A DNA stretch of 64,000 nt from Pristiophorus japonicus (Eukaryota), in contig NC_091999.1 of the NCBI RefSeq assembly GCF_044704955.1, positions 20,212,001 through 20,276,000 of the forward strand, written 5' to 3'. The translations under genes were made by a program, and so were the position numbers. Under the pieces are notes generated by a model, which was not told where the DNA came from, did not search any database, and saw only the letters and a list, made by a program, of their open reading frames with translations. The first letter of the stretch is position 1, and each line of letters begins with the position of its first letter. Positions 103 to 64,000 of the stretch are shown here, piece by piece.

Positions 103-503
103 AGTGTCAGCTGTGGCTCAGTGCTAGTGCTCTCGCTTCTGTGTGAGAAGGTCGTGGGTTCAGAATCCCACTTCAGAGACTTGAGCACATGAATCTAGGC
201 TGAGAGTCCAGTGCAGTGCTGAGGGAGCGCTGCACTTTCGACGGTGCCGTTTTTCAGATGGGATATTAAACCGAGGCCCCATCTGCTCGTTCCTCTGGAC
301 ATGAAAGGTCCCATGACAATATTTCGACTAAGAGCAAGGGCTTGCGGGGTGGGGTTATCCCTGCTGTCCTGGCCAATATTTATCCATCAATCAACGTAAC
401 TAAAAATAGATTATCTGGTCATTTTCACATTGCTGTTTGTGGGAGTTTGCTTGCATGCAAACTGGCTGCTGCATTTTGTACATTATAGCAGTGACTACAC
501 TCC
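103..503 (+). mobile_element. tRNA-derived SINE with Deu-type core (SacSINE1/DeuSINE-like)
   Basis: A-box TGGCTCAGTG and B-box-like GGTTCAGAATCC head. Central cagtgctgagggagcgctgcact...taaaccgaggcccc core. Near-identical layout at 35557, 45085, 50153 and (minus) 32055. Confidence 0.8.
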
Positions 504-504
504 A

Positions 505-992
505 AAAGAAGGGGTGCAACAAATGTTCACGGGATTGATTCCTGGGATGCGAGGGTTGTCCTATGAGAAGAGATTGAGTAGATTGGGCCTATATTCTGTG
601 GATTTTAGAGAATGAGAGATGATCTCCTTAAAATGTATGAAATTCGTAGAGGAAATTCGCAGAATAGAGCCTTGGATGCTGTTTCCCCTGGCTGATGTGT
701 CTAGAACTAGAGTTCATAGTCTTTGGATATGCCATTCAGGTTAGAGATGAGGAGAAATTTCCTCATTCACAGGGTTGCGAATCTTTTGAATTCTATACCT
801 CAGAGAGCTGTGAATACTCAGCCGTGGAGTATATTCAAGACAGAGATAGATAGATTTTTGGGCACTAAGTGAGTTAAATGTTTTGGGGATAGGGCGGGAA
901 AGTGAAGTCGAGGTCATAAAACCACCATGATCTTATTGAATGCTGGAACAGGCTCGAGGGGCCGTATGACCTACTCCTGCTCCTATTTCTTA
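505..992 (+). mobile_element. CR1 LINE 3' fragment
   Basis: FTGLIPGMRGLSYEKRLSRLGLYS (CR1 ORF2 C-terminus) followed by the CR1 3' UTR hairpin ggctcgaggggccgtatgacctactcctgctcc. Confidence 0.85.
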
Positions 993-1032
993 TTTTTTGG
1001 GATGGATCAATCCAGCCACAGCTGCGTTGATA

Positions 1033-1069
1033 TATTTTCGACGGCAGAGTCCGCTGTCTGCTCATTGAG
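1033..1069 (-). other. Degenerate recombination signal sequence of the NAR-like V pseudogene
   Basis: Minus strand CTCAATG (decayed CACAATG, 1063-1069), ~21-bp spacer, TCGAAAATA nonamer-like (1033-1041), just after the YRCKA motif. Confidence 0.4.
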
Positions 1070-1338
1070 ATTTACCTACCCATCTCTAAGCTTTGCATCG
1101 GTATGTGGCAACTTATTCAATTCTCAGAACCTTCACTTCCAAAACAAACAACTTTATTTATTTTTTGACTGATTCAACAAATTGTCCTCCAATAGGAATG
1201 GTTTCTGACTGTGATCCCCTTCTCGAAAACGACACTAGCCCATTTTACCCAATATATAGCTATTGTGAAAAAAACAAGTGCTGGTGATAGACTGGCAATC
1301 CTTCCTACTCACTATAATTATTCTGTGACTGAAGACCA
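1070..1338 (-). pseudogene. IgNAR-like V exon (NAR-TCR V type), pseudogene
   Basis: After the acceptor ccctttcAG the manual translation is xVFSHRIIIVSRKDCQSITSTCFFHNSYILGKMG*CRFREGDHS, a frameshift, then ETIPIGGQFVESVKK*IKLFVLEVKVLRIE*VATYRCKA*RW. This matches the VNAR pattern [36 protein letters not shown]. The canonical Cys codons (1274-1276 and 1095-1097) are ~60 codons apart, so there is no CDR2. Confidence 0.8.
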
Positions 1339-1475
1339 CTGAAAGGGAAACAAGTCCAGCAAGTCTATTTAAAGAGTCTTCAATGTCCAATATTACTGAC
1401 AGACCAATAGCAAGAGAGTGCTACAATCCAAGTATATTATATTCTTGTTCAACATTTACTGCATTGAATACTCAC

Positions 1476-1530
1476 ATTATAATTGGGTCAACAGGATGGA
1501 GTCACTGCAAAGCGTCATTCGGACGCACAT
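1476..1530 (-). pseudogene. Leader exon of the NAR-like V pseudogene
   Basis: ATG at 1530 gives MCVRMTLCSDSILLTQL* plus 1 nt, then a GTGAGT donor (phase 1). The 137-bp intron leads to an exon starting xVFS, like the IgNAR leader end LLAWLPN/VFT. Confidence 0.6.
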
Positions 1531-4386: not shown

Positions 4387-4425
4387 GGTTTTTGTGCACA
4401 CTCTGTCACTCATTATCACACTGTG
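4387..4425 (-). other. Consensus 23-RSS of TCR V segment 1
   Basis: Minus strand CACAGTG (4419-4425), exactly 23 bp spacer, ACAAAAACC (4387-4395): perfect consensus. Confidence 0.97.
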
Positions 4426-4696
4426 TGAACGACACAGAAGTAGGTCGCTGTGTCTGTCAGATGTAAGTCCACGATAGTCAGGGAGCTGCGCTTCTCCGAA
4501 CTTTGACTGACGGCTGTAAATCGTCCTTTATGTTCAGCATTTTCCGATGCCAACATCACCATCTTTGTGCTTTGGATTGGATGCTGGACCCACCAGAATA
4601 TCGCAGAGAAGGAAATGGTTGTGTGACAGTTAATCGATATGGTTTTCCCTTCACTGGCAGTCTGTGACGGAAATGTTCGTACAATTTCCTCTTTAC
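4426..4696 (-). CDS. T-cell receptor alpha/delta variable segment 1 (V exon; leader exon not identified)
   Basis: Acceptor gttatAG. Open frame GKEEIVRTFPSQTASEGKTISINC..FWWVQHP..GRFT..SSLTIVDLHLTDTATYFCVVH with both canonical Cys, the Trp and DTATYFC, ending at a perfect 23-RSS. Confidence 0.9.
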
Positions 4697-10518: not shown

Positions 10519-10920
10519 AGACTCAGCGCGCAGTAATAGGTGGCGGATTCAGCAGGCCGCAGTTTGAAGGTGGTTAAAATGAAGATGACTTTGGCAGTGT
10601 CCAGCACAATGGCGAAACGGCTTTCAGCAAAATCCGCTTTTATTTGGCAACCGCCTGAAAGCTTGACAACAATAAACTCGGGTTCACTGCCGGCGTATTG
10701 GCACTCATGGTCGTGAAATAGATTATAATGATTCCTTCTGTCCAACTCACTGTTGGAAGCTGCTGTCTGACAGAGATTTCCTGGGACAGACCTGCATTAA
10801 ATGCAAACCAACGTCAAAAAGTAAACCATTTTTAAATTCACATTTGACCCCAAACCGTGTCTCAGAATAATTACCTGTAAGTAATGCTCCAAACACAGCA
10901 CAGATACCGATTAACCGCAT
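10519..10920 (-). pseudogene. T-cell receptor alpha/delta V segment 2, pseudogene (leader 10875-10920, V exon 10519-10791)
   Basis: Leader MRLIGICAVFGALLT-G|GTAATT and an 83-bp intron ending TGCAG. The V exon reads GLSQEISVRQQLPTVSWTEG; a deletion/frameshift then removes the first Cys and the WYxQ Trp. It resumes QYAGSEPEFIVVKLSGGCQIKADFAESRFAIVLD..LRPAESATYYCALS. Confidence 0.88.
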
Positions 10921-20855: not shown

Positions 20856-20894
20856 AGTTTTTGTAGCAGTGTCAAGAGTTCATGTAACGCCGTG
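20856..20894 (-). other. 23-RSS of TCR V segment 3
   Basis: Minus strand CACGGCG (CAC intact), 23-bp spacer, ACAAAAACT. Confidence 0.9.
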
Positions 20895-21202
20895 CTACAT
20901 AGCTGCGCAGTAATACACGGCGGAGTCAGACAGCTGGGTGGGTGTGATGTTCAAAGGGATGTTTTTGTTCATTCTGTCCTGTACGGCAGAAAACTGCTTT
21001 ATAAAGGCTGGTGCGTTCTCTTCATTCCCAGCAGTGTGTCTGGCGAGCATGTACTGAAGGCCTCTTCCCAAGTACTGTACATACCAGAATAGGTTAGCGG
21101 CTGTGTATGTGGTGGAGTAGTTACAGGGCAACACCGCCGTACCTCCTTCACTCGCTGCTGCTGCTGAAGGTCTTTGGTAAAGTTCACCCTGCCGGCTGGG
21201 TG
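20895..21202 (-). CDS. T-cell receptor alpha/delta variable segment 3, V exon
   Basis: Acceptor gtttgcAG. Open frame APSRQGELYQRPSAAAASEGGTAVLPCNYSTTYTAANLFWYVQYLGRGLQYML..LNITPTQLSDSAVYYCAAM, then TAG abutting the heptamer. Confidence 0.92.
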
Positions 21203-22437: not shown

Positions 22438-25270
22438 GATGGGCATCAATGATCATTGTTATTTGATGGACACCAATGACCATTGTTATTTGATGGACAC
22501 CAATGACCATTGTTATTTGATGGACACCAATGACCATTGTTATTTGATGGACACCAATGACCATTGTTATTCGATGGACACCAATGACCATTGTTATTTG
22601 ATGGACACCAATGACCATTGTTATTTGATGGACACCAATGACTATTGTTATTTGATGGACATCAATGACCATTGTTATTTGATGGGTAGCAATGACCATT
22701 GTTATATGATAGGTAACAATAACCATTGTTATTTAATGGACACCAGTGACCATTGTTATTTGATGGACACCAATGGCCATTGATATTTTAATGGAAACCA
22801 ATGACCATTGTTATTTGATGGACATCAATGGCCATTGTTATTTAATGGACACCAATGACCATTGTTATTTGATGGACACCAATTACTATTGTTATTTGAT
22901 GGACATCAATGACCATTGTTATTTGATGGGTAGCAATGACCATTGTTATATGATAGGTAACAATAACCATTGTTATTTAATGGACACCAGTGACCATTGT
23001 TATTTGATGGACACCAATGGCCATTGATATTTAATGGAAACCAATGACCATTGTTATTTGATGGACATCAATGGCCATTGTTATTTAATGGACACCAATG
23101 ACCATTGTTATTTGATGGACACCAGTGACCATTGATATTTGATGGACACCAATGACCATTGATATATGATGGACACCAGTGACCATTGTTATTTAATGGA
23201 AACCACTAACCACTGTTATTTAATGGACAGCAATGACCATTGTTATTTGATGGACACCAATGACCATTGTTATTTAATGGAAACCACTGACCATTGTTAT
23301 TTGATGGGCACCAATGACCATTGTTATTTGATGGGTAGCAATGACCATTGTTATTTAATGGACACCAGTGACCATTGTTATTTAATGACGCCAATTACCA
23401 TTTTTATTTAATTGATGCCAATGGCCATTGTTATTTGATGGACAGCAATGACAATTGTTATTTAATGGACACCAGTTACCATTATTATTAGATGTGTAGC
23501 AATGACCATTGTTATTTAATGGACACCAGTGACTTGTGTTATTTAATGGACACCAGTGACCATTGTAATTTGATGGACACCAATGACCATTGTTATTTAA
23601 TGGACTCCAGTTACCATTGTTATTAGATGGGTAGCAATGACCATTGTTATTAGATGGGTAGCAATGAGCATTGTTATTTGATGGGCACCAATGACCATTG
23701 TTTTTTGATGGGCAGCAATGACAACTCTTATTTGATGAACACCAATGACCATTTTTATTTGATGGGTACCAATGTCCATTGTTATTTGATGGGTACCAAT
23801 GACCATTGTTATTTTATGGACTCCAATGACCATTGTTATTTCATGGACAACAATGACCATTGTTATTGATGGGAAGCAATGGCCATTGTGATTCAATGGA
23901 CACCAACCACGATTGCAATTTGATGGGCAATAATGACCGTTGTGACTTAATGGACACCAGTGACCATTGTTATTTCATGGACACCAGTGACCATTGTTAT
24001 TTGATGTTTAGCAATGAACATTGTAATTGGATGGTCAGCAATGACCATTGTTATTTGATGGACATCAATGGCCATTGTTATTTAATGGACACCAATGACC
24101 ATTGTTATTTGATGGACACCAGTGACCATTGATATTTGATGGACACCAATGACCATTGATATATGATGGACACCAGTGACCATTGTTATTTGATGGACAC
24201 CAGTGACAATTGATATTTGATGGACACCAATGACCTTTGTTATTTGATGGACACCAGTGACAATTGATATTTGATGGACACCAGTGACCTTTGTTATTTA
24301 ATGGACACCAGTGACCATTGTTATTTGATGGACACCAATGACCATTGTTATTTAATGGAAACCACTGACCACTGTTATTTAATGGACAGCAATGACCATT
24401 GTTATTTGATGGACACCAATGACCATTGTTATTTAAAGGAAACCACTGACCATTGTTATTTGATGGGCACCAATGACCATTGTTATTTGATGGGTAGCAA
24501 TGACCATTGTTATTTAATGGACACCAGTGACCATTGTTATTTAATTGACGCCAATGACCATTTTTATTTAATTGATGCCAATGGCCATTGTTATTTGATG
24601 GACAGCAATGACAATTGTTATTTAATGGACACCAGTTACCATTATTATTAGATGTGTAGCAATGACCATTGTTATTTAATGGACACCAGTGACTAGTGTT
24701 ATTTAATGGACACCAGTGACCATTGTAATTTGATGGACACCAATGAACATTTTTATTTAATGGACTCCAGTTACCATTGTTATTAGATGGGTAGCAATGA
24801 CCATTGTTATTAGATGGGTAGCAATGAGCATTGTTATTTGATGGGCACCAATGACCATTGTTATTTGATGGGCAGCAATGACAACTCTTATTTGATGAAC
24901 ACCAATGACCATTGTTACTTGATGGGTACCAATGACCATTGTTATTTGATGGGTACCAATGACCATTGTTATTTTATGGACTCCAATGACCATTGTTATT
25001 TCATGGACAACAATGACCATTGTTATTGATGGGAAGCAATGGCCATTGTGATTCAATGGACACCAACCACGATTGCAATTTGATGGGCAATAATGACCGT
25101 TGTGACTTAATGGACACCAGTGACCATTGTTATTTCATGGACACCAGTGACCATTGTTATTTGATGTGTAGCAATGAACATTGTAATTGGATGGTCAGCA
25201 ATGACCATTGTTATTTGATGGGTAGCAATGAACATTGTTAATTGATGGACAGCAATGACCATTGTTATTT
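22438..25270. repeat. 27-bp minisatellite (~105 units), consensus GATGGACACCAATGACCATTGTTATTT, with higher-order duplication
   Basis: Unit read directly (translates as MDTNDHCYL). Diagnostic variants recur at 1160-bp (23531/24691, 23881/25041) and 244-bp (22681/22925) periods. Confidence 0.97.
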
Positions 25271-46354: not shown

Positions 46355-48152
46355 ATTCTGAATGGATGGCTCACATTAAACACTCCGTCACCACCTATCC
46401 CGCAGGCTTTAAGCTCATTCCCGACTGTCTCTTAGTGGCTCCCATTAAACGCTCCCTCAACACGTTTCACGCAGGTTCTAGACAGACCCCGGCTCTCACT
46501 GAGTGGCTCCCATTAAACGCTCCCTCACCAACTATGCCGCAGGTTATAAGCTCACCCCCGGCTGTCACTGAATGACTCACATTAAACGATCCGTCACCAC
46601 CTATCCAATGAGTTTTAGACTCACCCCCAGCTCTCACTGAGTGGCTCACAGTAAACGCTCCCTCACTACCTATCCCACAAGTTATGGACTAACACCCGGC
46701 GCTCACTGACTGACTCACACTAAACGCTCCCTCACTACCTATCCCACAAGTTATGGACTCAGCCCCGGCTCTCATTGAGTGGCTCACACTATACTCTCCC
46801 TCACCTTCTATCCCACAGGTTATGGACTCACCCCCAGCTCTCATTAAGTGGCTCTCATTAAACGCTCCCTCACCACCTATCCCGCAGTTTATAGGCTCAC
46901 CCCCGGCTCTCAAGGAGTAACTTACACTATACACTCCCTCACCACCTATCCCGCAGTTTATTGGCTCATCCCCGGCTCTCAAGGAGTGCTTAATCTATAC
47001 GCTCCCTGACCACCTATGCCACAAGTTATAGACTCAACCCCGGTTCTCACTGAGTGGTTCGCATTAAACACTCCCTCACCACCTATCCCGTAGGTTATAG
47101 ACTCATCCCCGGCTGTCACTGAGTAGCTCCCATTAAACGCTCCCTCACCACCGAACCCACAGGTTATGGACACACCCCCGGCTGTCACTGAGTGGCTCAT
47201 GTTAAACGCTCCCTGAACACGTATCACGCATATTATAGACTGACCACGGCTCTCACTGAGTGGCTCCCATTAAACTTCCCTCACCAGCTATTCATCAGGT
47301 TATAAACTCACCCCCGGCGGTCACTGAATGGCTCCCATTAAACGTGCCCTCACCACCTATCCAATGGGTTATAGACTCACCCCCAGCTCTCACTGACTGG
47401 CTGAGACTAAACGCTCCCTCACCAACTATCCCGCAGTTTATAGACTCACCTCAGCTCTCATGGAGTGGCTCACACTATATGCTCCCTCACCACCTATCCC
47501 ACACTTTATAGGCTCACCCCCGGCTCTCACTGAGTGGTTCCCATTAAACGCTCCCTCACCACCTGTCCAATGGGTTATAGACTCACCACCAGCTCTCACT
47601 GAGTGGCTCACACTAAATGCTCCCTCACCACTTGTCCCGCATTTTATAGACTCACCCCCGGCACTCATTGAGTGACTCCCATTAAACGCTCCCTCACCAC
47701 CTATCCCGCAGTTTATAGACTCACCTCGGCTCTCATGGAGTGTATTACACTATACGCTCCCTCACCAGCTATCCCACAGTTTATTGGCTCACCCCCGGCT
47801 CTCACTGAGTGCTTCACATTAAATGCACCCTCATCACCAATCCCTCAGGTTATGAACTCGCACCCGGCGCTCACTGACTGGCTCCCATTAAACGCTCCCT
47901 CACCACCTATCCTACAGGTTATGGACTCACCCCCGGCTCTCACCGAGTGGCTCCCATTAAACACTCTCTCACCACTTATCGCGCAATTTATAGACTCACC
48001 CCCAGCTCTCAAGAAGTGGCTCACACTATACGCTCCCTCACCTTCTATCTTACAGGTTATGGACTCACCTCTGGCTCTCACTGAGTGGCTCCCATACAAC
48101 GCTCCCTCACCACTTATCCTGCAGTTTATAGGCTCAACCCAGCTGTCACTGA
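46355..48152. repeat. 69-bp minisatellite (~26 units) in GPCR intron
   Basis: Unit gctctcactgagtggctcccattaaacgctccctcaccacctatcccgcaggttatagactcacccccg; period 69 (46492/46561). Confidence 0.95.
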
Positions 48153-49011
48153 CAGGTTCTCTGCAATGCCGCCTTTACAGTGATACTGCATACCATGACA
48201 CTGTCTAATGTTCAAGGAACAACTGGACCGAGTTCTGGGAGTTGTGCCCTGGCCAACATTTGTCCCTCAACCAATATCACAAAGGTGCAGTTTGCTGGTC
48301 AATGATCTCATTGCCTTTTTTCACCGCCCATTAGCAGAATAGCTACTCCATTAACCAGATAGCAACAGTCGTAATTTGGAGTCATTCCATATGGGAATTT
48401 TACGATTCTCCTGAGGTGTAAATAGCAGTCGATCGCACTCTTTCTACCATCAATTTTCAAGGTGACATTATGTTTAGCTTGTCCTATTTAATGTTGGGAT
48501 AAATTATTCATTAACTATTAGTTTATTTCTGTTCTTTACTATGGTCAGTTTCGCTCTCCTTCTCTTTTTGTGCCGAGTTCAGGCGATTATAGCTTCACGT
48601 CTATCGAGCAAAACGCTTTCCCTGCGATTCCATATTGTTCCGTATTTAGTAAAGCTCTGCTGATCTGGCAAATTGATTGGATTCCATCAACTGATCAGGT
48701 AATGAACTCAGAAACCATGTCCAGTCAAACTAAGTCTTTGAATGGCTATGGAGGCTGGGTCACTGAAGATAATTAAGGCGGAGATAAACAGATTTTTGAG
48801 CGATAAGTGAAAGAAGGTTTCGGGGGGGTGGGCAAGGAAGTGGAGCTGATCCATGATCAAATCAGCCATGATCTTATTAAATGGCGGAGCAGGCCCGGGG
48901 GAGGGGGGTGCGGTTGGAGGCAAATGGCCTACTCCTGCTCCTATTTCATATGTGCTTATGTTCTTATGATGGTAGTCTGATGTGTAATTTCCATTTTGCT
49001 CCTTTTTGCAG

Positions 49012-49904
49012 CGAACATCGCGGCGATTGTGATCCTGTCCCGAGGAAGGTGCGGTCTCTCCAGGTGTATCACTCGGTACCTGGTGTTCATGGCGGTGACC
49101 GATCTCCTGGTGATTATCACCGCTGTGATATTGAATAGAATTGGTGGTATCTATTTCCGGAATAGCATTCTGTCCACCACACCAGCGTGCAGCATCAGCA
49201 CTGTGCTCATTTATTCATCAAGAGACAGTTCTGTCTGGTTAACGGTCGCGTTCACCTTTGATCGATTTGTGGCCATTTGTTGCCAGAAGCTGAAAACAAA
49301 ATACTGCACCGAGACAACGGCGGCTGTGGTGATAGGAGCGGTCTGTGCCCTGAGTTGTTTAAAAAACATCCCTTTCTACTTCACGTATGAGCCATTGTTT
49401 ACTATTAATAAGGTGGCCTGGTACTGCAACATAAAACTTACTTTTTATGTTTCACCCGCTTGGACAGCGTTTGACTGGCTGGACCGTATTCTAACCCCGT
49501 GTGCACCGTTCCTCCTGATGTTACTGCTCAATGCTGTGACCGTCAGATACATTCTAGGGGCTAGTAGGGCCCGCAGGAGACTCCGGGCCCAAAACAATGG
49601 AGAGAGTCAGAGTGATCCAGAGATGGAGAGCCGGCGAAAGTCCATAATTTTACTCTTCACCATCTCGGGAAGTTTCATCCTGTTGTGGTTGACGTATGTT
49701 ATCAATTTTCTCTATGTCCGAATTGAAAACAATAATTATTTCAATGACCCCAAATTTGTTATGCAGGAAAGTGGAAACATGCTTCAGCTCCTAAGCTGCT
49801 GCACTAACACGTTTATTTATACAGTGACTCAGAGTAACTTCAGACAGCAGTTAAAGAACGCGCTGAAATATCCATTGAATCTAGTTGTTAAATTACTTCT
49901 ATAA
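49012..49904 (+). CDS. GPR139/GPR142-like class A GPCR gene 1, exon 2 (spliced protein 320 aa)
   Basis: Acceptor cctttttgcAG|CG. ANIAAIVILSRGRCGLS, MAVTDLLV (TM2), FTFDRF (DRY-like), KYCT, LTPCAPF, RRKSIILLF, CCTNTFIY (NPxxY-like). Open to TAA at 49902-49904; 70+893 nt = 321 codons including stop. Confidence 0.9.
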
Positions 49905-50152: not shown

Positions 50153-50520
50153 CACTCAGCCGTGGTAGCCCTCTTGCACCTCAGTTAGAAGAATGTGGGT
50201 TCAAGTCCCATTACAGGTTGACCCGCCCGTGCAGTACTGATGGAATGCTTCTTTGTCAGATGGTGCTGTCTTTCAAGTGAGACTTTAAACCGAGGTTCCG
50301 TCTTCCCTCTCAGGTGGATGCCAAGGATCTGAGTGTATTATATTCAAGAAGTGAGTAAATGTTCTGCCGATGCCCTGACCAATGCTTATCGCTCAACAAA
50401 TATCACCAAAACTGATTATCTGCGCCTGTATTTATTTCTCGGTAGGTGGAACTTTGCTGAGTGCAAATCCGCTGCCACGTTTCCCTGCATTACAACAATG
50501 ACTACACTTCAATATAAAGC
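50153..50520 (+). mobile_element. Deu-type SINE whose tail runs into a minisatellite
   Basis: tRNA-like head (gggttcaagtccca), Deu core (taaaccgagg), ..cattacaacaatgactacacttcaa. Confidence 0.75.
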
Positions 50521-51748
50521 ACCTTGGAACCTCCCTGGGTGTGAGGCTCCATGGAACCTTCTTGGGAGTACATCGCCTTGGATCCTCCCTGGGAGTAAAA
50601 CACTTTGGAACCTTCCTGGGTGTAAAAAACTTTGGATCCTCCCTGGGTCTGAAATACTTTGGAACCTCCCTGGGAGAAAAACAATTTGGAACCTCCCTGG
50701 GTGTAAAACAATTTGGAACCTCCCTGGGTGTAAAACACTTTGGAACCTCACTGGGTGTAAAGCTCCAGGGAACCTCCCTGGGTGTAAATCGCCTTCGAAC
50801 CTCCTTGGGTGTAAAACATTTTGAAACCTCCCTGTGGGTGTCAAACACTTTGGAACCACCCCCCATCCCGGGTGTAATGCTCTTTGGAACCTCCCTGGGT
50901 GTAAAACACTTTGGAACCTCCCTAGGTGTAAAACACTTTGGAACCTCCCTGGGAGTAAAACACTTTGGAACCTCCCTGCGTGTAAAACACTTTGGAACCT
51001 CCCTGGGTGTAAAACACTTTGGAACCTCCCTGGGTGTAATGCTCTTTGGAACCTCCCTGGGTGTAATGCCCTTTGGAACCTCCCTGGGTGTAATGCGCTT
51101 TGGAACCTCCCTGGGTGCAATGTTCTTTGGAACCTCCCTGGTTGTAAAACACTTTGGACCCTCTCTGCATGAAAACACTTTGGAACCACCCTGGGTGTAA
51201 AACACTTTGGAACTTGCCTGGCTGTGAAACACTTTGGAACCTCCGGGTGTAAAACACTTTGGAACCTTGCTGGGTGTAAATATCTTTGGAAACTCCCTGG
51301 GTATAAATCTCTTTGGAAGCTCCCTGCGTGTAAAACACTTTCGATCCTCCCTGGGGATACATCCCTCCCTGGGGATACATCTCTTTGGAAACTCCCTGGG
51401 TGTGAAGCACTTTGGAACCTCACTGGGTATGAAACACTTTGGAACCTCCCTGTGTGTAAATATCTTTGGAAACTCCCTGGGTGTAAATATCTTTGGAACA
51501 TCTCTGGGTGTAAAGCACTTTGGAACCTCCCTCGCTGTAAAGCTCCATTGAACCTCCCTGGGTGTAAAGCCCTTTGGAACCTTTCTAGGTGTAAAGCACT
51601 TTGGAACGTCTCTGGGTGTAAAGCCCTTTGGAACCTCCCTGGGTGTAAAGCGCTTTGGAACCTCCCTGGTTGTAAAGATCTTTGGTACCTTCCTGCATGT
51701 CACACTCTTTTGGTCAACCCTGGCTGCAACGCCCTTTGGAGCCTCCCG
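50513..51748. repeat. 27-bp minisatellite (~45 units), consensus TGTAAAACACTTTGGAACCTCCCTGGG
   Basis: Unit read directly; explains the long repetitive ORFs (WNLPGCKTL, PREVPKCFT). Confidence 0.95.
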
Positions 51749-61860: not shown

Positions 61861-64000
61861 ACTTATACCACTTGGTTATATGCCATGCATCTGTATCAAT
61901 GGACACTATGTTAGTTCTGTAAAATAAAGAGGCTACTACCTTCAGACACCATTCACACAAAGTCATATTGGAATTCTAATCTGCCATTTCTCTTACTTGC
62001 AGCGAATTTTGTGACGAAAGACATCCCTTCCCAAGGAAGGTGTGGTCTCTCCAGATGTATCATTTTGTATCTGGTGTCGATGGGGCTGACCGATCTCCTT
62101 GTCATTATCATCGCTGTAATATGAAATAGGATCAGTATTACTTATTCCCCAGGTAGCTTCCTATCCATTACCCCGCTGTTTAATGTCAGTACTGTATTAA
62201 TATTTGCAGCCAGTTCGGCCTGGTTTACACATCGCTTTCACTTTCGATCAATTTGTAGCCATTTCTTGCAAAATCGTAAAACAAAATACAGCATCGAGAA
62301 AACGGCGGCTGTGGTTTTTGAACGGTCTGTGCGCTGTGCTTTACATCCATTTTGATTTTATCTATAAATCATCATATATAATTAACAAGATATCGTGTTA
62401 CTGCAACGTTAAGTTACTTTTTTATACGCCTCCTTTATGGACAGCGTTTGACTGGAGTGGCTGCATTCTAGCCCCGTGGCTCCCGTTGATTCTGATCTTG
62501 CTGCTCAATGCTCTGACCGTTAGACGCATTCTAGGCCAGTAGAGCCCGCAGGAGACTTCGAGCCCACGGCAATGAAGATACTCAGAGTGAGCTAGAAACA
62601 GAGAACCGCAGAAATTCCATCGTTTTACTCTTCGCCATGTCAGGAAGTTTTAACTTTTTATGGATGGCTATGTTGCAAAGGTATTATTTGTTGAAATTAC
62701 AAAAGGTAATTATTCCGTGGGTTTCAACTTCAATGAGCCAAAGTTTATTACAGGTTATTTGTAACTATGCTGAAGCTTTTGAGTTCCTACACCAACACCT
62801 GTATTTATGCCATTATCCAGAATAAATTCAGACAACAGTTGAAGAATATGGTGACTTTTCCTCTCAATCTACTTGTTAAATGATTTACATAATTACATAG
62901 ATTGTAACATTGATTCTGTCCAATATCTCACGGTGCAGACCTTTACCAAACATATGCACTCACTACCTTTGCTTTCACACGGAACTCCCAGATTGCCTCT
63001 CGCTCCAAGATTGTTCCACGTACACACAACGTGGGCATGTTTGAGGGTATTTTAACTATTTCTCCCAAATCGAATCTTGTAAAAGGATCTGATTAGGTTT
63101 TCAGTAATTCTATCCATTCTGTAGGCGCTGTCTTACTTTTGCACAGGTTTGAGAGCGCCAATCACCCTTGACAATCTCGACATTAATAATTGAGATAGTC
63201 AGATTATTGAATATAAGCAGATGCACGTATAGATTATGAAATAAAATAACTTAGTTGGTATTTTGTGTAATTAAACGAAAGTACTGTAAGATTGTAAGGT
63301 TAAAACACACAACAGCGAGATGCAAAGCTGTAGAAGTGAGCTTTTATCAGAGGGGAGTGTGAAGAAGGAATTTCGATTGCCAGCTTAGAAAAGAGAAAAT
63401 CAATATTATGAAATAAAGGTTTGAAGAGATAATACATCAACACATGCACAACAAATGGTAACAGTTAAACTTAGGACAAAATGAGTGCAACTGTATCAAT
63501 AGCATTTACGCAGAGAGGTAGTCCTAACATATGGTGCAAACATTCTTTAGAAAAATACCACTGTCTGAAGCTGCTGGAAAATCTTCAATCTGCTTCTTCT
63601 GAGGCTAGTGTAAAAAGCAAACGCAACACGCATGTGATCTCCTGATGACCAATCATTTGCAAATTATTTATAAATACTACCGATCTCATATGCATTGTGC
63701 ATAATTGGTGTGTATTATTATCTCTTTGAATTGATTTCCTACATTACAACAGCGATTGTACTTCAGAAGAACTTTATTGATTGTAAAGCGCTTTGGTGCA
63801 TCTGCTGTTCATGAAAGGCGCTATATAAATGCAGGAGCTTTAAATAATCTTTTAATTGTTTTCCATTTTTCGAACTTGTGTTACAGGTAAAGAATGCATG
63901 ATGAATTTTAATACCTTCATATTAAAGCAATAAGGATAAATGACAATATTCTATAATACGTCTAAACATAGGCAATACAGATACATGACAATTATCAATA

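What the first reader, a model, noticed from the sequence alone, without database searches (positions are those of the whole stretch)
1033..1530. Hidden IgNAR-like (NAR-TCR type) V pseudogene inside a TCR V cluster
Seen in the sequence: a minus-strand leader exon with a GTGAGT donor, a phase-1 intron, and an exon that reads, across stops and one frameshift, VFS..SRKDCQSITSTC..KMG*CR..ETIPIGGQFVESVKK*IKLFVLEVKVLRIE*VATYRCKA, followed by a decayed RSS. No ORF in the track shows it. Established knowledge: the I-x-I-G-G-x-F/Y-V-E-S/T-V and T-Y-R-C-K motifs and a ~60-codon Cys-Cys distance (no CDR2) are the shark single-domain VNAR signature. Sharks also place VNAR-like V-D-J cassettes upstream of leaderless supporting TCR-delta V segments to build the two-V-domain NAR-TCR. 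Inference: this is a dead NAR-TCR V, so the window is part of a TCR alpha/delta locus with antibody-like cassettes, and its D/J and supporting V should lie left of position 1.
Basis: partly seen in the sequence, partly recalled or inferred. Interest (0 to 1): 0.85.

Follow-up and report, generated by a model that had tools for sequence, protein, structure and literature searches.

The report
Dead shark NAR-type V gene relic
This is a broken, non-functional copy of the shark-specific single-domain "NAR" variable gene, most likely of the kind that sits on top of a T-cell receptor delta chain. It lies among ordinary T-cell-receptor V genes, and the gene family is already known from this kind of locus.

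Summary
I count five disabling lesions. They are a TAA in the leader, three in-frame stops and one frameshift.

The exon has the NAR-type V layout:
- The Cys-Cys span is 60 residues.
- The stretch from the Trp position to the GxF glycine is 17 residues, as in published VNARs. The two open TCR V exons in the window have 22 and 29.
- IPIGGQFVESV matches the published VNAR string IGGRYVESVN at 7 of 10 positions.
- The exon ends in TYRCKA.

A Cys in the a-b loop, a published NAR-TcR V hallmark, and the neighbouring TCR alpha/delta-type V exons favour the NAR-TCR lineage over IgNAR.

The "decayed RSS" is no better than chance. No D or J lies in the 1.09 kb downstream, most of which is LINE and SINE sequence.

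No database-wide comparison was possible. Single pieces gave nothing, and the joined read-through has no reference, so the comparison with VNARs was made by hand against sequences printed in papers.

The scan already reported a similar relic and intact NAR-TCR cassettes elsewhere on this chromosome. Known family, dead copy, low interest.

The parts
1476..1530 (-). Leader-like exon. ATG at 1518-1516 (upstream in-frame ATG at 1530-1528). It reads MTLCSDSILLTQL, then an in-frame TAA at 1479-1477. Base 1476 is the first base of the split codon (phase 1).
1339..1475 (-). Leader intron of 137 nt, with donor GTGAGT at 1475-1470 and a polypyrimidine tract plus AG acceptor at 1340-1339.
1089..1338 (-). 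V exon of a NAR-type V domain, broken by three in-frame stops and one frameshift. It ends in TYRCKA.
1295..1297 (-). TGC Cys in the a-b loop (KDCQS), seven residues before the first canonical Cys. This is a NAR-TcR V hallmark; the VNARs printed in PMC13053647 have Gly here.
   Evidence: PMC1845163; PMC13053647 Table 2
1274..1276 (-). First canonical Cys (STC).
1235..1237 (-). Stop TAG at the position of the framework-2 Trp, 13 residues after Cys1. It is one base away from TGG and from several other codons.
1209..1210 (-). Frameshift. Two leftover bases (AG) lie between frame A (..CRFREGDH) and the frame of SETIPIGG.., equal to a 1-nt loss or a 2-nt gain.
1167..1199 (-). IPIGGQFVESV, the counterpart of the VNAR HV2-region string IGGRYVESVN.
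   Evidence: PMC6576789 Table 3
1158..1160 (-). Stop TAA. It is polymorphic: the read contigs carry C at 1160 on the plus strand, which gives GAA (Glu).
1113..1115 (-). Stop TAA inside LRIE-x-VATYRC.
1095..1097 (-). Second canonical Cys (TYRC), 60 residues after the first.
999..1088 (-). Unique DNA where an RSS should lie. No heptamer plus nonamer match better than chance.
503..998 (+). 3' part of a LINE, with many copies in the window. Positions 924-998 have read depth in the millions. It fills the DNA just downstream of the V relic.
104..508 (.). SINE-like repeat, with copies at about 35557, 45082 and 32461.

Best explanation
A solitary, dead germline V gene segment of the shark NAR family, the single-domain V shared by IgNAR and NAR-TCR. 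It is most likely of the NAR-TCR lineage.

It keeps the two-exon V-gene anatomy of leader, short phase-1 intron and V exon. It can be neither translated nor recombined. The leader and V exon carry four stops and a frameshift, no recombination signal survives, and a LINE and a SINE occupy the DNA where its D and J would be expected.

Inferred history: a duplicate of a NAR-TCR V, or of a whole cassette, landed or stayed among TCR alpha/delta-type V segments. It lost selection and has since decayed neutrally. It now has no function.
For: Shown directly:
- Gene anatomy and reading.
- The composite motif is unique in the window and absent from 300 shuffles.
- Landmark spacing is Cys1 to Trp position 13, Trp position to GxF glycine 17, glycine to Cys2 30, total 60. 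The window's two open TCR V exons give 12/22/30 and 13/29/30.
- Counted by hand, the two VNARs printed in PMC13053647 Table 2 give 14/17/30, total 61.
- The relic therefore aligns to them without a gap from the Trp position to the end, with 21-23 of 84 residues identical overall. Against the second printed VNAR (H9N2-2SP4H), 15 of the last 37 positions are identical.
- IGGQFVESVK matches IGGRYVESVN (PMC6576789 Table 3) at 7 of 10 positions.
- Local alignment to the window's own V exons is not significant (z 1.4-2.7), whereas the two TCR Vs match each other at z 18.7. There is no DNA similarity to the rest of the window.

For the NAR-TCR lineage:
- Cys in the a-b loop and a leader exon (hallmarks from PMC1845163).
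- Neighbouring V exons are Pfam V-set, carry 23-RSSs and hit TCR alpha chains best among single-domain PDB chains.

Dead and single copy:
- Read contigs confirm the frameshift and two of the three exon stops at depth about 14, with 3 differences in 399 nt, as expected for neutral DNA.
- Runs X5 and X6 (kind unknown) show no coverage over the gene.
Against: - No database-level test places it with NAR V domains. Single pieces gave no hit in PDB, Pfam or the 1.84-billion-protein library, and the joined read-through could not be submitted.
- The N-terminal 22 residues match the printed VNARs poorly, at 3 or 4 of 22 positions.
- The difference in length from the nearest TCR V in the window is only 5 residues.
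- Whether the Trp is absent, the second NAR-TcR hallmark, cannot be read.
- No RSS, D, J or supporting V-delta was seen.
- In a decayed gene, the a-b loop Cys could have arisen from the Gly codon by a single base change.
Confidence: 0.75

Rival explanations
1. It is the V of a decayed IgNAR-type (IgH minicluster) gene, not of a NAR-TCR cassette. Its D, J and constant exons would lie, or once lay, to the left.
For: IgNAR V and NAR-TCR V share the features tested, namely spacing, the IGGxYVE[ST]V motif and YxCKA. IgH clusters are interspersed with TCR alpha/delta-type V exons in sharks (PMC12227049). An unchecked scan note reports an IgM-type 3' end 26 kb left of the window.
Against: The a-b loop Cys is described for NAR-TcR V, not IgNAR V, and the printed VNARs have Gly there. 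According to PMC12227049, IgH isotype clusters keep their own V(D)JC together.
Confidence: 0.1
2. It is an ordinary TCR alpha/delta or Ig V pseudogene that lost about five codons in the C'-C'' region and resembles NAR V by chance.
For: The window's V at 4434-4694 has a Cys-Cys span of 64, only 4 more than the relic. It aligns without gaps to the relic's C-terminal 38 residues at 11 identities. No statistical database test for NAR membership could be run.
Against: Similarity to the window's V exons is not significant (z 1.4-2.7). IGGQFVESV matches a VNAR-specific string at 7 of 10 positions, where the TCR Vs have KGRFTAVS or IKQFSAVQ. The spacing equals VNAR exactly, and the a-b loop Cys fits NAR-TcR V.
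Confidence: 0.1
3. It is a chance pattern produced by choosing frames across stops in non-coding DNA.
For: The reading crosses three stops and one frameshift, and single pieces find nothing in any library.
Against: The 40-codon C-terminal part lies in one frame, and its composite motif was absent from 300 shuffles. Cys1, the Trp position and Cys2 have V-domain spacing. A start codon, GTGAGT donor, 137-nt intron and AG acceptor in the right phase precede the exon.
Confidence: 0.03

Closest known systems
NAR-TcR V gene segments of cartilaginous fish (Criscitiello, Saltis and Flajnik 2006, as described in PMC1845163 and PMC12227049)
   Same: NAR-type V layout, a leader exon, a Cys in the a-b loop, and a location among TCR alpha/delta-type V segments.
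   Different: It is dead: four stops, a frameshift and no RSS. No D, J or leaderless supporting V-delta was seen. By unchecked scan notes it lies about 9-10 Mb from the intact NAR-TCR cassettes on the same chromosome. The state of the Trp position is unreadable.
IgNAR V domains (VNAR), for example the two printed in PMC13053647 Table 2 and the string IGGRYVESVN in PMC6576789
   Same: Identical spacing from the Trp position to Cys2 (17 + 30 residues). There is no CDR2/C'' stretch. The IGGxYVE[ST]V, LRIxD/E and TYxCKA motifs are shared. Overall identity is 25-27% with a single one-residue gap in CDR1.
   Different: Cys instead of Gly in the a-b loop. The N-terminal strand differs (no VDQTP). CDR1 is one residue shorter. 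No IgNAR D, J or C exons are seen, and the neighbours are TCR-type Vs.
Ordinary TCR alpha/delta V segments of the same window (4434-4694, 20907-21201)
   Same: Same strand, same leader-intron-V-exon gene type, and the same 30-residue spacing from the GxF glycine to Cys2.
   Different: Their C'-C'' region is 5 and 12 residues longer. They keep open frames and 23-RSSs. They show no significant sequence similarity to the relic.

Membership tests
NAR-type V domain (IgNAR V / NAR-TCR V) | V-set landmarks: Cys1, framework-2 Trp position and YxC Cys2 at V-domain spacing | tested here: met
   Cys1 to Trp position 13 residues, total Cys-Cys span 60. The Trp position itself is a TAG stop.
NAR-type V domain (IgNAR V / NAR-TCR V) | Missing CDR2/C'' stretch, that is, a short distance from the Trp to the GxF/Y glycine | tested here: met
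   17 residues in the relic against 22 and 29 in the window's TCR Vs. The VNARs of PMC13053647 Table 2 also have 17 (counted by hand).
NAR-type V domain (IgNAR V / NAR-TCR V) | IGGRYVE(S/T)V-type motif after the C' strand, and TYxCKA at the end | tested here: met
   IPIGGQFVESV at 1167-1199 matches IGGRYVESVN (PMC6576789) at 7 of 10 positions. TYRCKA compares with TYHCKA. The composite motif is unique in the window and absent from 300 shuffles.
NAR-type V domain (IgNAR V / NAR-TCR V) | Best database or profile match and tree position within NAR V domains rather than TCR or Ig V | not testable with these tools
   Pieces alone gave no hits. The read-through has no reference, so it was not sent to any search tool. 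No NAR sequence could be obtained (one search found one candidate only). MAFFT could not place the pieces on a scaffold.
NAR-TCR V (as opposed to IgNAR V) | Typical leader exon | tested here: met
   ATG, about 14 codons, GTGAGT donor and phase-1 intron. It is weakly hydrophobic and carries a TAA, so it is decayed.
NAR-TCR V (as opposed to IgNAR V) | Cys in the a-b loop (PMC1845163) | tested here: met
   TGC at 1297-1295, seven residues before Cys1, where the printed VNARs have Gly.
NAR-TCR V (as opposed to IgNAR V) | Lacks the canonical Trp of the WYRK motif (PMC1845163) | tested here: inconclusive
   The position is a TAG stop, one base away from TGG and also from TTG, TAT/TAC, CAG, AAG, GAG and TCG. 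The read-contig allele gives CRYRE after the stop, which allows a second register.
NAR-TCR V (as opposed to IgNAR V) | Own D and J, then a leaderless supporting V-delta with a CDR1 Cys downstream | tested here: inconclusive
   No J-like peptide and no RSS above chance in 1-1088. Positions 104-998 are LINE and SINE.
NAR-TCR V (as opposed to IgNAR V) | Lies among TCR alpha/delta V segments | tested here: met
   Three V-set exons lie on the same strand with 23-RSS or retained nonamers. Their best single-domain PDB hits are TCR alpha chains.
Functional germline V gene segment | Open leader and V exon | tested here: not met
   Stops at 1479-1477, 1237-1235, 1160-1158 (polymorphic) and 1115-1113, and a frameshift at 1210-1209.
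Functional germline V gene segment | Recombination signal sequence after the V end | tested here: not met
   The best match is 9 of 16, equal to the typical best score of random window pieces. The V at 4434 has a perfect CACAGTG-23-ACAAAAACC.

The most novel reading that the evidence does not exclude
The relic is not a stray copy of a NAR-TCR cassette. Instead it is a fossil of the exchange of a NAR V(D)J unit between the TCR delta and IgH minicluster systems, the step proposed in PMC12227049 for the origin of IgNAR. On this reading, a NAR-TCR-type V (with the a-b loop Cys) once headed an IgH-type cluster whose remnant is the IgM-like 3' end noted 26 kb to the left.
Probability: 0.05. Interest if true: 0.6.

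Novelty: new member of a known kind. Interest (0 to 1): 0.2.

Why it matters
It adds one dead copy to the catalogue of NAR-type V genes in a shark antigen-receptor region. It also shows that such copies lie outside the main NAR-TCR cassette array, next to ordinary TCR-type V exons and, by an unchecked scan note, near an IgM remnant. That fits the published picture of a large mixed IgH/TCR alpha-delta complex in elasmobranchs. It may help date duplications of the NAR V. It opens no new question by itself.

Tried and rejected
- PDB phmmer on the two longest stop-free pieces (34 and 28 aa) gave no hit at E up to 10.
- Pfam on the same pieces gave none.
- phmmer of the 34-aa piece against 1.84 billion representatives gave no hits.
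- ESM Atlas on the same piece gave no usable hit.
- The search for homologous proteins with the neighbouring V ORF found one word-sharing candidate and none scored. This library therefore could not supply shark V or NAR sequences.
- I tried to lay the five pieces on a TCR V scaffold with MAFFT, to make a profile for a PDB search. The pieces were misplaced and I dropped the approach.
- The joined read-through with X at each break was built only inside the sandbox from window.fa.
- VNAR sequences printed in papers were compared by hand only.
- Three key papers (PMC1458790, PMC7039070, PMC7909615) are not held.
- An alternative register using the TGG codons of the third frame was considered. It was rejected because it gives too short a CDR1 and no YRK-like continuation.
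- The search of earlier findings by sequence returned nothing.

Full report
**What is there**

Reading the minus strand gives a two-exon V-gene anatomy:
- a start codon at 1518-1516, with a second in-frame ATG at 1530-1528
- a short leader frame, MTLCSDSILLTQL
- a GTGAGT donor at 1475-1470
- a 137-nt intron with a polypyrimidine tract and AG acceptor at 1340-1339
- a V exon from 1338 to 1089

The intron is phase 1. T at 1476 joins TG at 1338-1337.

- VFSHRIIIVSRKDCQSITSTCFFHNSYILGKMG
- TAG (1237-1235)
- CRFREGDH
- two leftover bases (1210-1209), which mark a frameshift
- SETIPIGGQFVESVKK
- TAA (1160-1158)
- IKLFVLEVKVLRIE
- TAA (1115-1113)
- VATYRCKA

That makes five disabling lesions in about 300 coding bases.

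**Is it more than chance, and is it real DNA?**

The C-terminal 40 codons lie in one frame. The composite GG.[YF].E[ST] followed 18-26 residues later by Y.C occurs once in the six-frame translation of the whole window. It occurred in none of 300 first-order shuffles.

Public DNA runs of the same organism (coded X1 and X3) hold the stretch as a single-copy contig of depth about 14 over 969-1367. That contig has no indel and three substitutions:
- 1160 A>C turns the TAA at 1160-1158 into GAA, so that stop is polymorphic. The other lesions are shared.
- 1227 A>T changes CRFRE to CRYRE.
- 1025 C>T lies outside the exon.

Three differences in 399 nt fit neutral DNA. Two further runs of unknown kind (X5, X6) have no contig over the gene. 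This gives no sign of expression, though it proves nothing.

**The RSS claim fails**

The best heptamer plus nonamer match with a 12- or 23-type spacer in 1000-1100 is 9 of 16. That is the typical best score for random 101-nt pieces of the window.

The V exon at 4434-4694, by contrast, is followed by a perfect CACAGTG-23-ACAAAAACC. The V exons at 20907 and 10530 keep their nonamers.

**What kind of V is it?**

Landmark spacing was measured by script. The table gives residues between landmarks.

| V exon | Cys1 to Trp position | Trp position to GxF glycine | Glycine to Cys2 | Total |
|---|---|---|---|---|
| Relic (1089-1338) | 13 | 17 | 30 | 60 |
| TCR V at 4434-4694 | 12 | 22 | 30 | 64 |
| TCR V at 20907-21201 | 13 | 29 | 30 | 72 |
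| VNARs in PMC13053647 Table 2 (counted by hand) | 14 | 17 | 30 | 61 |

The relic therefore aligns to VNARs without any gap from the Trp position to the end, with a single one-residue gap in CDR1. By hand I count 23 of 84 and 21 of 84 identical residues against the two printed VNARs. Against the second of them (H9N2-2SP4H), 15 of the last 37 positions are identical.

The string IGGQFVESVK matches IGGRYVESVN from a horn-shark-based vNAR library (PMC6576789 Table 3) at 7 of 10 positions. The neighbouring TCR Vs have KGRFTAVS and IKQFSAVQ there.

Local alignment of the X-joined read-through, built only in the sandbox, with the window's own V exons is not significant (z 1.4-2.7). The two TCR Vs match each other at z 18.7. 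The locus shares no DNA similarity with the rest of the window. Its N-terminal 22 residues match VNARs poorly (3 or 4 of 22).

**NAR-TCR or IgNAR?**

PMC1845163, summarising Criscitiello et al. 2006, lists three NAR-TcR V hallmarks: a typical leader, a Cys in the a-b loop, and no canonical Trp in WYRK.
- The relic has a TGC Cys at 1297-1295 in KDCQS, seven residues before Cys1. The printed VNARs have Gly at this position.
- It has a leader-like exon.
- The Trp position is a TAG stop. TAG is one base from TGG but also from six other sense codons, so this hallmark cannot be read.

The context fits. Three V-set exons lie on the same strand (Pfam). Their best single-domain PDB matches are TCR alpha chains, and they have 23-type RSSs.

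**Downstream**

No J-like peptide and no RSS above chance lies in 1-1088 on the minus strand. Positions 503-998 are the 3' part of a LINE, and 924-998 reach read depths in the millions. Positions 104-508 are a SINE-like repeat. Only 999-1088 and 1-103 are non-repeat DNA.

Unchecked scan notes give about 1.3 kb for intact NAR-TCR V-D-J units elsewhere on this chromosome. If that holds, the D and J of this copy would be expected inside the window had the repeats not been inserted. They are either lost or pushed left of position 1.

**Wider setting**

[quoted passage not shown] It also shows that TCR alpha/delta-type V exons lie between IgH clusters, and it maps NARTCR V exons there.

An unchecked scan note reports an IgM-type 3' end 26 kb left of this window. 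The window may therefore belong to that mixed complex rather than to the core TCR alpha/delta V array.

The scan has already reported another NAR-type V relic 31 Mb away and intact or fossil NAR-TCR cassettes 9-10 Mb away on the same chromosome. This is not the first such finding in this genome.

**What could not be done**

- A database-wide or profile comparison of the whole domain with NAR, TCR and Ig V sets, and a tree, could not be run.
- Tools refuse a reference that reads through a stop.
- Single pieces are too short to score.
- The protein library gave no shark V sequences.
- A scaffold alignment of the pieces failed.
- The joined read-through has no reference, so that search step was left out.
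- Sequences printed in papers were compared by hand only.

**Verdict**

This is a real, dead NAR-type V gene, most likely of the NAR-TCR lineage. It has no RSS and no visible D, J or supporting V. The family is known, the copy is new, and the interest is low.

Noticed in passing
window 1158-1160: One of the pseudogene's stops is polymorphic. The assembly has TAA, while the read contigs of the same sample have GAA (plus-strand 1160 A>C). Two more differences lie at 1025 and 1227.
   Followed up: partly
window 4395-4694 (minus): Open TCR alpha/delta-type V exon with a perfect CACAGTG-23-ACAAAAACC signal. The only upstream ATG-to-GTGAGT stretch (4916-4858) is not hydrophobic, so its leader is doubtful.
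   Followed up: partly
window 20860-21201 (minus): Open TCR alpha-like V exon. Its heptamer is CACGGCG (5 of 7), with a 23-nt spacer and nonamer ACAAAAACT. The upstream candidate leader frame ends in TAA right before a GGTACA donor-like site.
   Followed up: no
window 10530-10745 (minus): C-terminal half of a V exon (..AESATYYCALS) with a retained ACAAAAACT nonamer and a weak V-set match (E 0.1). Probably another V relic.
   Followed up: no
window 48996-49904 (+) and 62204-62542 (+): An open 302-aa rhodopsin-type GPCR ORF (Pfam 7tm_1, E 1e-19) lies inside the V-gene stretch. A 112-aa ORF, 48% identical to its middle part, lies 12 kb further on.
   Followed up: partly
window 22438-25270, 46367-48152, 50515-51695: Three large minisatellites: a 27-nt unit x105, a 69-nt unit x26 and a 27/54-nt unit x44. 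They generate long spurious ORFs on both strands.
   Followed up: no
window 104-998: A SINE-like repeat (104-508) abuts the 3' part of a LINE (503-998, plus strand). The LINE tail at 924-998 is among the most abundant sequences in the read sets.
   Followed up: partly
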